This document shows positions 61,889-61,994 of a stretch of 64,000 nucleotides of DNA, in pieces. The position numbers were made by a program, and so were the translations under genes. The notes beneath the pieces are model-generated. The model was not told where the DNA came from and did not search any database. It saw nothing but the letters and a program-made list of their open reading frames with translations. Position 1 is the stretch's first letter. Each line of letters begins with the position of its first letter. The stretch is from IMG/VR virus record IMGVR_UViG_3300024252_000004, positions 248,001 through 312,000 of that record, one strand, 5' to 3'.

Positions 61889-61994
61889 GGGGAGTGGGTG
61901 GACTGGTTCGAGTCCAGATAGAAAGGTTATACCCTACCCGCATGGCAAAGGATCGCGCGTCCGACTTTAGGTTCGAATCCTAAACTCTCCACCA
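61889..61994 (+). ncRNA. 106-nt anticodon-less alanine-identity RNA with two T-loops
   Basis: GGGGAGT/ACTCTCC (G3-U70), A73-CCA; TTAGG-TTCGAAT-CCTAA; extra CTGG-TTCGAGT-CCAG. Confidence 0.75.

What the first reader, a model, noticed from the sequence alone, without database searches (positions are those of the whole stretch)
61889..61994. Second alanine-acceptor RNA defines a family and carries an extra T-loop domain
Seen: G3-U70, A73-CCA and a canonical T-arm. It shares GG.AAAG.AT..CGCGCGT..GAC with the 45858 RNA, including the C(GCGC)G hairpin. An added domain (GGGTGG/CTACCC stem) holds a second T-loop hairpin, CTGG-TTCGAGT-CCAG. Two diverged copies 16 kb apart argue against simple decay. 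Established: T-loop modules mediate tRNA-elbow recognition in T-boxes, RNase P and the L1 stalk. Inference: the extra domain may bind a tRNA elbow or the ribosome.
Basis: partly seen in the sequence, partly recalled or inferred. Interest (0 to 1): 0.82.

Follow-up and report, generated by a model that had tools for sequence, protein, structure and literature searches.

The report
Conserved anticodon-less alanine-type tRNA-like phage RNA
A giant phage and its two known relatives keep a 106-base tRNA-like gene that has the alanine-charging end of a tRNA but nothing to read a codon with, so it probably acts on the translation machinery as a mimic rather than a decoder; its supposed sister RNA 16 kb away is not a demonstrable relative.

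Summary
Window 61889-61994 (+) has a perfect 7-bp acceptor stem with G3:U70, A73, an encoded CCA, a canonical T arm, a GGGTGG/CTACCC stem and an inner CTGG-TTCGAGT-CCAG hairpin. Shuffled windows give 0.015 acceptor/T-arm/NCCA elements and none with G3:U70 plus A73.

It is a real gene. Two related ~400-kb phages carry orthologues that are 85% identical over exactly this span. The flanking intergenic DNA does not align, and the neighbouring ORF is present in one relative and absent in the other. That conservation is at the upper end of the range for the syntenic true tRNAs (57-97%).

ARAGORN and Rfam do not call it. The anticodon position holds a 4-bp stub whose loop length differs between orthologues, so it cannot decode there.

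The "family" claim is weak. The 45858 RNA is missing at the syntenic site in the two related lineages where that site could be examined. It scores lower against the RNA2 model than ordinary tRNAs do, and the shared motif is marginal (p about 0.02-0.04). It looks like a tRNA-Ala whose anticodon loop is missing.

Best reading: a non-decoding, probably alanine-charged mimic that resembles the tRNA-like domain of tmRNA. Binding of a tRNA elbow or the ribosome is untested.

The parts
61889..61994 (+). RNA2: the whole 106-nt tRNA-like gene
   Evidence: Sequence read. Orthologues L090:2717-2823 and L172:16444-16550 are 85% identical over exactly this span, and the flanks do not align. Not called by ARAGORN or by any Rfam family at E<=10.
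61889..61895 (+). Acceptor stem, 5' strand GGGGAGT (G3 = 61891)
   Evidence: Pairs 7/7 with 61984-61990. Invariant in the 3 orthologues. The first four pairs and A73 are the same as in the window's tRNA-Ala at 46455-46530.
61896..61939 (+). Inserted 44-nt domain: stem P2 (61896-61901 with 61934-61939) enclosing the inner hairpin and a 16-nt strand
   Evidence: P2 is GGGTGG/CTACCC here and GGATA/TATCC in L090. There is one compensatory G-C to A-T change and one G-T to A-T change, and the distal pairs are lost in L172.
61903..61917 (+). Inner hairpin CTGG-TTCGAGT-CCAG with a T-loop-type 7-nt loop
   Evidence: Invariant in all 3 orthologues. TTCGAGT is also the T loop of four ordinary tRNAs in this window.
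61918..61933 (+). Single strand of the inserted domain with invariant GG (61925-61926)
   Evidence: GG is invariant while its neighbours vary. The suggestion that it partners a T loop is inference only.
61940..61949 (+). Linker GCATGGCAAA with invariant GG (61944-61945)
   Evidence: It lies where a D loop, or the D-loop analogue of tmRNA, would supply GG to the T loop (inference).
61950..61962 (+). Stub hairpin GGAT-CGCGC-GTCC in the anticodon/variable-arm position
   Evidence: 4 bp with a 5-nt loop here; GGAC-TTGCGC-GTCC with a 6-nt loop in the orthologues. A loop length that varies rules out an anticodon loop.
61963..61966 (+). GACT connector before the T arm
   Evidence: GAC here and GAT in the orthologues.
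61967..61983 (+). T arm TTAGG-TTCGAAT-CCTAA
   Evidence: Invariant in the orthologues.
61984..61994 (+). Acceptor 3' strand ACTCTCC (T70 = 61988), A73, CCA
   Evidence: The next ORF starts 16 nt downstream at 62011.
61704..61775 (+). Conserved structured element upstream of RNA2. It is outside the RNA and may be a leader or a regulatory element.
   Evidence: Found next to RNA2 in L172, and both upstream of the ORF and as a second diverged copy in L090. Two hairpins carry compensatory changes at 5 pairs.
45858..45921 (+). RNA1: 64-nt alanine-type tRNA-like element. It is not shown to be related to RNA2.
   Evidence: G3:U70, A73 and CCA are present. It folds as acceptor stem, D-like hairpin, 3-4-bp stub with a GCGC loop, and T arm. 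Rfam tmRNA scores 20.8 bits, below the gathering score of 47. It is absent from L163/L172 and L166.

Best explanation
RNA2 is a real, selectively maintained gene for a non-decoding tRNA-like RNA, derived from a tRNA (probably a class II, Ser/Tyr-type one).

Shown:
- It keeps an intact acceptor stem, T-arm minihelix and encoded CCA.
- It sits in the tRNA array exactly as the tRNAs do, with the next ORF's ribosome-binding site a few bases after its 3' end.
- It has no anticodon arm in the canonical position. In place of a D arm it has a conserved 44-nt domain with a second T-loop hairpin.

Inferred:
- RNase P and 3' trimming cut it out of the array transcript, as for its tRNA neighbours.
- AlaRS charges it with alanine, because G1-C72, G2-C71, G3-U70, G4-C69 and A73 are all present and AlaRS needs only the acceptor helix.
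- Since it cannot pair with a codon, it works as a mimic of the tRNA-like domain of tmRNA. It would occupy SmpB, EF-Tu and/or the empty A site of stalled ribosomes.
- That would either block host trans-translation tagging during infection, or give tag-less rescue together with the phage's own peptidyl-tRNA hydrolase and release-factor genes.

My confidence is about 0.85 that it is a functional non-decoding tRNA-like RNA, about 0.55 that it is alanylated, and about 0.25-0.3 for the tmRNA-like mode of action.
For: - Conservation: orthologues in two related phages are 85% identical over exactly 61889-61994, and the rest of the intergenic region does not align.
- It is kept in L172 although the 143-aa ORF next to it is absent there.
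- Syntenic true tRNAs between the same two phages are 57-97% identical.
- The acceptor stem, both T-loop hairpins and both GG dinucleotides are invariant. Substitutions fall in P2 (one compensatory) and in the stub loop.
- Far above chance. G3:U70 predicts tRNA-Ala in phage arrays, 32 of 43 cases.
- No anticodon arm: ARAGORN and Rfam tRNA are silent, and the stub loop is 5 nt in one orthologue and 6 nt in the others.
- A clear 81-nt tRNA-like-domain-only tmRNA sits in another phage tRNA cluster, L011:13090-13170.
- Huge phages are known to carry tmRNA and SmpB (PMC7162821).
- Context: the window encodes IF3, peptide deformylase, PTH2, an RF-1-domain protein, RNA ligase and aaRS genes.
- Layout parallels the tmRNA tRNA-like domain: acceptor strand, GG-containing single strand, a short helix next to the T arm, G-A-C, T arm.
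Against: - The Rfam tmRNA model gives no hit on RNA2 at E<=10. It gives 75 bits on the tRNA-like-domain-only control and 20.8 bits on RNA1.
- The tmRNA 5' motif GGnUUCGAC is absent from the linker. GAC is GAT in the orthologues.
- No SmpB gene was seen among the 47 window ORFs scanned, or in the Pfam hits on record for the relatives' loci. Most of the ~400-kb genome was not examined.
- Covariation is minimal: one compensatory pair in three sequences, not above the shuffles.
- There is no expression, processing or charging evidence.
- G3:U70 differs by a single A3-to-G change from the common phage Ser/Tyr acceptor GGAGAGT. It could therefore be inherited rather than selected for alanine identity.
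Confidence: 0.35

Rival explanations
1. Processing handle only. The element is kept because its acceptor/T-arm minihelix is an RNase P and 3'-processing site. It would cut the long array transcript and free the downstream mRNA close to its ribosome-binding site. Charging would be irrelevant.
For: - The next ORF starts 16 nt after the CCA here and 21 nt after it in L090/L172.
- Many true tRNAs in the array are followed by ORFs at about 20-30 nt.
- RNase P needs only the acceptor/T-arm stack and the CCA (established knowledge).
Against: - It does not explain why the 44-nt inner domain, both GG dinucleotides and the stub are conserved, with the inner hairpin invariant.
- A plain tRNA would do the same job.
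Confidence: 0.2
2. Uncleavable decoy. This would be a tRNA-shaped RNA with no anticodon loop that soaks up a host tRNA-targeting defence or toxin, or another tRNA-binding protein, which recognises the tRNA body, elbow or alanine-type acceptor end.
For: - Phage tRNA arrays are widely thought to counter tRNA-targeting defences (my own knowledge, not checked here).
- The window also encodes an RNA ligase.
- Independent anticodon-less alanine-type elements occur in other phage tRNA clusters: RNA1 here, and L073:4534-4601.
Against: - No defence or toxin partner was identified.
- Most known anticodon nucleases read the anticodon loop itself.
- Nothing here was tested.
Confidence: 0.15
3. The second T loop, with or without the canonical one, forms an elbow-docking platform like those of T-box stem I, RNase P and the L1 stalk. 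The RNA would then bind another tRNA's elbow or a ribosomal site.
For: - The inner loop TTCGAGT fits the T-loop consensus and is closed by G-C.
- The inner hairpin is invariant in the orthologues, and two invariant GG dinucleotides are available as partners.
Against: - The known platforms are two interdigitated T loops in a defined geometry. Nothing here tests that.
- The simplest expectation is that each T loop pairs with one GG, as in a tRNA elbow.
Confidence: 0.1
4. An unorthodox decoding tRNA. P2 plus the inner hairpin (6 + 4 bp) would stand in for the D-stem/anticodon-stem stack, and the loop TTCGAGT would present anticodon CGA (codon UCG).
For: - The 7-nt loop has U33 and a purine at position 37.
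- The acceptor is one change away from the window's own tRNA-Ser-like gene at 4239-4332 (GGAGAGT).
- The best non-self hits of the RNA2 model are class II tRNA-Ser genes, at about 40 bits.
Against: - The loop and its G-C closing pair match T arms, and the same loop occurs in four T arms of the window.
- tRNAs that read U-starting codons almost always have A37, not G37 (established knowledge).
- There is no D arm, and 16 nt bulge out between the two helices.
- With G3:U70 it would put alanine at serine codons.
Confidence: 0.06
5. A decaying or chimeric tRNA pseudogene with no function, made by recombination in an array rich in homing endonucleases.
For: - HNH genes lie in the array at 45900-46433 and 46609-47094.
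- RNA1 fits this picture well: it is lineage-specific, sits where tRNA-Ala begins in L163, abuts an HNH gene, and lacks its anticodon loop.
Against: For RNA2, conservation is as high as for true tRNAs and stops at its boundaries. It persists through changes of gene neighbourhood.
Confidence: 0.08

Closest known systems
tRNA-like-domain-only tmRNA of phages (mycobacteriophage DS6A; PMC4131195). Example seen here: L011:13090-13170.
   Same: - Phage-encoded, short, with an alanine-type acceptor (G3:U70, A73, CCA) and a T arm.
- No anticodon arm and no message part.
- A short helix lies next to the T arm.
- The L011 example sits in a tRNA cluster.
   Different: - RNA2 is not recognised by the tmRNA model, whereas the L011 control scores 75 bits.
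- It lacks the GGnUUCGAC motif.
- It carries a 44-nt inserted domain with a second T-loop hairpin.
tRNA-Ala and alanine minihelices
   Same: - G1-G4 paired with C72-C69, including G3:U70, plus A73 and CCA.
- A 7 + 5 bp acceptor/T-arm stack.
- The acceptor helix alone is enough for AlaRS (established knowledge).
   Different: - No canonical D arm and no anticodon arm.
- 106 nt long.
- Not detected by ARAGORN or Rfam RF00005.
Phage T4 stable RNAs rnaC and rnaD (species 1 and 2)
   Same: - Small RNAs of unknown function encoded inside a phage tRNA cluster next to a homing endonuclease gene.
- rnaC has a T-arm-like hairpin near its 3' end.
   Different: - No encoded CCA, and no acceptor stem with G3:U70 in the predicted fold.
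- rnaC scores 16.6 bits against the RNA2 model, below T4 tRNA-Ser (25.8) and tRNA-Leu (22.0).
Interdigitated double T-loop elbow platforms (T-box stem I, RNase P, L1 stalk)
   Same: Two T-loop-type sequences are present in one RNA.
   Different: - Here the two lie in separate hairpins of a tRNA-like body.
- No evidence that they interdigitate or dock an elbow.
Anticodon-truncated alanine-type tRNA-like genes in other phage tRNA clusters (RNA1 here; L073:4534-4601)
   Same: - G3:U70, A73, CCA and a T arm.
- The anticodon arm is cut down to a stub.
   Different: - Those two keep a normal D arm and are 64-68 nt long.
- L073 still scores 40 bits as a tRNA.
- Neither has the inserted domain, and no specific sequence relationship to RNA2 was found.

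Membership tests
canonical tRNA (tRNA-Ala) | 7-bp acceptor stem, discriminator base, CCA end and T arm with a T-loop consensus | tested here: met
canonical tRNA (tRNA-Ala) | Anticodon arm of 5 bp with a 7-nt loop between the D arm and the variable region | tested here: not met
   There is a 4-bp stub with a 5-nt loop here and a 6-nt loop in the orthologues. ARAGORN makes no call.
canonical tRNA (tRNA-Ala) | D arm of 3-4 bp with a GG loop directly after positions 8-9 | tested here: not met
   It is replaced by a 44-nt domain made of P2, the inner hairpin and a 16-nt strand.
canonical tRNA (tRNA-Ala) | Score against the Rfam tRNA model RF00005 (gathering score 29 bits) | tested here: not met
   No hit at E<=10 in 61500-62400. 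32 tRNAs in the window pass the gathering score.
alanine acceptor identity | G3:U70 with A73, G2:C71 and G4:C69 | tested here: met
   Sequence read. Invariant in the orthologues. 32 of the 43 G3:U70 tRNAs in phage loci are tRNA-Ala.
alanine acceptor identity | Actual charging by AlaRS | not testable with these tools
   Needs an aminoacylation assay or charged-tRNA sequencing.
tmRNA / tRNA-like-domain-only tmRNA (RF00023) | Score against the Rfam tmRNA model (gathering score 47 bits) | tested here: not met
   RNA2 gives no hit at E<=10. RNA1 gives 20.8 bits. The positive control L011 gives 75.3 bits.
tmRNA / tRNA-like-domain-only tmRNA (RF00023) | 5' D-loop motif GGnUUCGAC leading into helix 2a, and GGAC before the T arm | tested here: not met
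   The linker is GCATGGCAAA. GGTTCGAG occurs only inside the inner hairpin. GAC precedes the T arm here but is GAT in the orthologues.
tmRNA / tRNA-like-domain-only tmRNA (RF00023) | Message part with a resume codon, tag reading frame and pseudoknots | tested here: not met
   The RNA is only 106 nt and ARAGORN makes no tmRNA call. This feature is also absent in the known domain-only forms.
tmRNA / tRNA-like-domain-only tmRNA (RF00023) | Binding of SmpB | not testable with these tools
   No SmpB family appeared among the 47 window ORFs scanned (25 of 29 families were shown) or in the Pfam hits on record for the relatives' loci.
   RNA1 scores 20.9 bits against the RNA2 model, below many ordinary tRNAs. 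Alignment of the central regions gives p = 0.016-0.10.
   RNA2 is conserved. RNA1 is absent from L163/L172 and L166 at the syntenic site.
double T-loop elbow-docking module | A second T-loop-consensus pentaloop | tested here: met
   TTCGAGT closed by G-C, invariant in the orthologues.
double T-loop elbow-docking module | Interdigitated three-dimensional arrangement and elbow binding | not testable with these tools
   Needs structure probing, cryo-EM or binding assays.
T4 rnaC/rnaD-type stable RNAs | Sequence or structure similarity | tested here: not met
   rnaC scores 16.6 bits against the RNA2 model, below the T4 tRNAs; rnaD gives no hit.

The most novel reading that the evidence does not exclude
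RNA2 is a two-elbow alanyl-tRNA mimic, a new kind of phage translation factor made of RNA. One half (acceptor stem and T arm, charged with alanine) would enter stalled ribosomes like the tRNA-like domain of tmRNA, but without a message. The inserted second T-loop domain would dock on a tRNA elbow, the L1 stalk region or a phage or host protein. Together with the phage's own PTH2 and release-factor genes this would give message-less, tag-free ribosome rescue, or a block of host tagging.
Probability: 0.12. Interest if true: 0.85.

Novelty: new variant of a known kind. Interest (0 to 1): 0.58.

Why it matters
Phage tRNA arrays are usually read as codon-supply or anti-defence sets. RNA2 is as conserved as the true tRNAs around it, is built to be charged, and cannot decode at the canonical position. 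That points to a second use of the tRNA shape by giant phages.

If it is alanylated and acts on SmpB, EF-Tu or stalled ribosomes, it would be a natural minimal relative of tmRNA with an extra domain. It would give a small, tractable RNA for asking how anticodon-less acceptors enter ribosomes, and how phages handle ribosome rescue.

Standard annotation tools miss such genes. Several other uncalled tRNA-like genes turned up in phage arrays during this work.

Tried and rejected
**Searches for more homologues**
- A pattern built on the motif shared with RNA1 found only the same phage in IMG/VR.
- A pattern on the 3' end found ordinary tRNA Ser/Tyr/Phe/Ala genes plus a few unrelated odd elements.
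- A pattern on the inner hairpin plus ATGGCAAAGG found only the source contig in both IMG/VR and the JGI metagenomes.
- A pattern on the acceptor strand plus an early T loop gave only parts of ordinary tRNAs.
- Two scans of bacterial and archaeal genomes gave nothing.
- BLAST of RNA1 and RNA2 against isolated phages gave only T-arm matches. The Xoo-sp13 match was an ordinary tRNA-Phe.
- Protein searches with the flanking ORFs showed that the RNA2 neighbourhood is known from only three lineages with usable DNA. A fourth lineage for the RNA1 neighbourhood (L166) does not reach RNA2.
- Contigs for P0002, P0006 and P0007 were unavailable or too short.
- Flanking ORFs have no Pfam or PHROG family.

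**Ideas rejected or left open**
- RNA2 as a member of tmRNA.
- RNA2 as a relative of T4 rnaC.
- The stub as an anticodon arm, because its loop length varies.
- RNA2 as a tRNA with a removable insert. Deleting the 44-nt domain would leave a 62-nt RNA1-like molecule, but there is no evidence of splicing and this could not be scored against Rfam.

**Other**
- Covariation statistics are uninformative with three sequences.
- Promoter and terminator scans were uninformative.

Full report
**Setting.** The window is part of a 395-kb phage contig, IMGVR_UViG_3300024252_000004. Identical DNA is present in a second IMG/VR contig and in many other assemblies. It is a plus-strand array of 36 ARAGORN tRNA genes interleaved with small ORFs that have no known family. 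It also holds two class II aminoacyl-tRNA synthetase genes, NAMPT, IF3, peptide deformylase, PTH2, an RF-1-domain protein, an RNA ligase and homing endonucleases. No isolated phage is close. The best protein matches are about 40% identical, to jumbo phages such as Xanthomonas RTH11.

**The observation.**
- Acceptor GGGGAGT (61889-61895) pairs with ACTCTCC (61984-61990), with G3 opposite T70.
- A73 and CCA follow at 61991-61994.
- The T arm is TTAGG-TTCGAAT-CCTAA (61967-61983).
- GGGTGG pairs with CTACCC, enclosing the hairpin CTGG-TTCGAGT-CCAG.

Shuffled windows give a mean of 0.015 acceptor/T-arm/NCCA elements, and none with G3:U70 plus A73. The real window has exactly three with G3:U70 plus A73: tRNA-Ala(UGC), the 45858 RNA (RNA1) and this one (RNA2). 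In about 90 phage loci collected here, 32 of the 43 called tRNAs with G3:U70 are tRNA-Ala. ARAGORN does not call RNA2, and no Rfam family matches it even at E<=10.

**RNA2 is a conserved gene.** Homologues of the upstream 143-aa ORF and of an ORF near RNA1 led to two related phages.
- L090 is a 7.8-kb Logan contig.
- L163 and L172 come from a 405,912-bp ENA scaffold and its Logan counterpart.

Both carry an RNA2 orthologue, at L090:2717-2823 and L172:16444-16550. BLAST of the 319-nt intergenic region aligns only window 61885-61998, at 86%. The rest does not align. In L172 the 143-aa ORF is missing altogether, yet RNA2 is retained next to the same upstream structured element. Global identity between the window and L172 is 85% for RNA2, against 57-97% for 17 syntenic true tRNAs.

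The acceptor stem, the inner hairpin, the T arm and two GG dinucleotides (61925-61926 and 61944-61945) are invariant. Changes fall in three places:
- in P2, with one compensatory G-C to A-T change and one G-T to A-T change;
- in the strand of the inserted domain;
- in the stub loop.

With three sequences, two of them near-identical, covariation is not statistically informative. The case for function therefore rests on boundary-exact conservation. No further homologue was found in IMG/VR, the JGI metagenomes or 185,579 prokaryotic genomes with four different patterns. A profile search with the downstream protein also found only these three lineages.

**Anatomy.** RNA2 is a four-way junction like a cloverleaf.
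- Acceptor stem.
- P2 domain (61896-61939), in the D-arm position.
- A 10-nt linker containing GG.
- A 4-bp stub (61950-61962).
- A 4-nt connector.
- T arm.

The stub loop is 5 nt here and 6 nt in the orthologues, so it is not an anticodon loop. The inner hairpin loop TTCGAGT could formally be read as an anticodon loop (CGA). However, it is closed by G-C like a T arm, is identical to the T loop of four tRNAs in the window, and has G rather than A at position 37.

The acceptor differs by one base (A3 to G) from the common phage Ser/Tyr-type acceptor GGAGAGT. That acceptor is also used by an uncalled tRNA-Ser(UGA)-like gene at 4239-4332. The best non-self hits of the RNA2 covariance model are class II tRNA-Ser genes (about 40 bits; T4 tRNA-Ser and tRNA-Leu). 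A class II tRNA origin, with the stub descending from the long variable arm, is a reasonable inference.

**The 45858 RNA is not a demonstrable relative.** RNA1 (45858-45921, 64 nt) folds as acceptor stem, D-like hairpin, a 3-4-bp stub with a GCGC loop, and T arm. Its central 13 nt read as U, then UACGC, GCGUG, then AC. These are the two strands of a 5-bp anticodon stem abutting each other with the loop missing, which is what creates the palindrome ACGCGCGT.

Rfam's tmRNA model aligns RNA1 end to end at 20.8 bits, below the gathering score of 47. In L163/L172, tRNA-Tyr is followed by a conserved 97-nt spacer and then directly by tRNA-Ala, so RNA1 sits exactly where tRNA-Ala begins there. In L166, tRNA-Tyr is followed directly by the HNH gene, and window 45760-45915 is absent. 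RNA1 is thus missing from the two related lineages where the site could be examined.

Against the RNA2 model, RNA1 scores 20.9 bits, lower than dozens of ordinary tRNAs. Local alignment of the two centres gives p = 0.016-0.10, depending on scoring. The orthologues of RNA2 have lost part of the shared motif. What the two share is a design (alanine-type acceptor, no anticodon loop), not shown common descent. RNA1 may be functional, or it may be a by-product of rearrangement next to a homing endonuclease.

**Comparison with known kinds.** The closest described thing is a tmRNA reduced to its tRNA-like domain. Mycobacteriophage DS6A has one, and a similar molecule strongly inhibits tmRNA, perhaps by titrating SmpB (PMC4131195). 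Huge phages are known to carry tmRNA and SmpB (PMC7162821).

I found a clear 81-nt example in another phage tRNA cluster, L011:13090-13170. The Rfam tmRNA model scores it at 75 bits, so the model can detect such molecules. It does not detect RNA2. RNA2 also lacks the GGnUUCGAC motif and has an extra 44-nt domain. It is therefore not a member of the tmRNA family by these tests.

Its layout is nevertheless parallel: a GG-containing single strand, a short helix next to the T arm, G-A-C, then the T arm. T4 rnaC and rnaD are a precedent for unexplained small RNAs in phage tRNA clusters, but they show no specific similarity. Other uncalled alanine-type elements turned up in Xoo-sp13 (97 nt) and in L073 (68 nt, tRNA model 40 bits with the anticodon arm deleted). 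Anticodon-less alanine-type RNAs therefore seem to recur in phage arrays.

**Mechanism.**

Shown:
- a conserved gene with an intact acceptor/T-arm minihelix, all acceptor-end alanine determinants and an encoded CCA;
- no anticodon arm in the canonical position;
- a conserved second T-loop hairpin;
- placement in the array like a tRNA, with the next ORF starting 16-21 nt downstream.

Inferred:
- excision by RNase P and 3' trimming;
- alanylation by AlaRS (established knowledge: G3:U70 in an acceptor helix is sufficient);
- inability to decode.

The most likely role is therefore as a mimic acting on factors that recognise an alanyl acceptor and elbow without codon pairing, that is SmpB, EF-Tu or the vacant A site. 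It would either block host tagging or give tag-less rescue with the phage PTH2 and RF-1-domain proteins.

Each is weighed in its own section.

**Verdict.**
The conserved alanine-type RNA with an added T-loop domain is real. The two-member family is not supported. Elbow or ribosome binding is untested.
- I rate it a new variant of a known kind (phage tRNA-like and tmRNA-domain-like RNAs), restricted so far to one small clade of ~400-kb phages, and of moderate to high interest.

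Noticed in passing
window 4239-4332 (+): 94-nt class II tRNA-Ser(UGA)-like gene: acceptor GGAGAGT/ACTCTCC, G73, CCA, long extra arm. ARAGORN misses it and it does not reach the Rfam gathering score. There is one mismatch in the anticodon stem.
   Followed up: partly
window 35325-35415, 41294-41386, 47135-47221, 48464-48554 (+): tRNA-Ile, tRNA-Met, tRNA-Asn and tRNA-Lys genes of 87-93 nt with a long extra (variable) arm, which is unusual for these isotypes. In L172 the tRNA-Lys(CTT) orthologue is only 77 nt.
   Followed up: partly
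window 45858-45921 (+); L073:4534-4601 (-): Two independent alanine-type tRNA-like genes in which the anticodon loop is missing and the two stem strands abut, giving the palindromes ACGCGCGT and ACATGT. This could be a recurrent design or a recurrent deletion.
   Followed up: partly
window 45760-45857 (+): Conserved spacer after tRNA-Tyr. A 33-nt core is identical in L163. The hairpin GGGGCAG-TAGC-CTGTCCC changes to AAGTAG-TAGC-CTACTT in L163, which are compensatory changes. The spacer is absent in L166. GGGGCAG can also pair with the RNA1 3' strand, giving a 105-nt alternative.
   Followed up: partly
window 61704-61775 (+); L090:2088-2165 and 2630-2705; L172:16380-16440: Conserved structured element just upstream of RNA2, with two hairpins that carry compensatory changes at 5 pairs. 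In L090 it is duplicated on both sides of the 143-aa ORF, which suggests that the ORF is a mobile insertion. No Rfam match.
   Followed up: partly
window 45900-46433 (-) and 46609-47094 (-): Two HNH homing-endonuclease genes flank tRNA-Ala. The first overlaps the 3' end of RNA1 by 22 nt. In L166 its homologue overlaps the 3' end of tRNA-Tyr in the same way, so the cassette boundary lies right after a tRNA CCA end.
   Followed up: partly
window 54460-54537 (+) and 40274-40912 (+): An amber-suppressor-type tRNA (anticodon CTA), and a release-factor gene of which only the RF-1 domain and the last 40 positions of the PCRF domain lie in one ORF. The rest must be upstream in pieces, which hints at stop-codon read-through or a split gene.
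   Followed up: partly
window 56522-57007 (+); other ORFs of 130 aa or more not localised: A translation and RNA-repair gene set: IF3 (localised), plus peptide deformylase, PTH2 peptidyl-tRNA hydrolase, YqeY, RNA ligase, a HisRS-like domain, NADAR and NifU among the 47 ORFs scanned. Two class II aaRS genes lie at 7713-9140 and 24232-25716. The relatives also encode a ribosomal protein L12 homologue (L163:1375-1746).
   Followed up: partly
L007:8415-8511 (Xanthomonas phage Xoo-sp13, MN047793 37535-37631): Unannotated 97-nt element with the same acceptor as RNA2 (GGGGAGT/ACTCTCC, G3:U70, A73, CCA), a 13-bp acceptor/T-arm stack and a D-like arm. It gives only a weak tRNA-Sec hit (20.9 bits). The phage is cultured, so this can be tested.
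   Followed up: partly
L040:4568-4691 and L058:3186-3309 (KVP40-like vibriophages); also L071:6644-6766: tRNA-like genes of about 124 nt with normal acceptor, D and T arms but about 50 nt in place of the anticodon loop. ARAGORN does not call them.
   Followed up: no
L011:13090-13170 (-): 81-nt tmRNA reduced to its tRNA-like domain, inside a tRNA cluster of a 63-kb viral contig. Rfam tmRNA scores 75.3 bits. Its helix is capped by a GCGC loop, as are the stubs of RNA1 and RNA2.
   Followed up: partly
L163:10905-10981: The tRNA-Ala(UGC) of the 405-kb relative has a defective acceptor stem: GGGCCAT against ATGTGTCC, with one extra base and mismatches. It is either a degenerating gene or an assembly error.
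   Followed up: no
L166:7432-7503 and 5458-5650: Further tRNA-like genes that ARAGORN does not call in a related phage: a tRNA-Trp(CCA)-like gene without an encoded CCA, and a long element with a tRNA-like 3' half.
   Followed up: no
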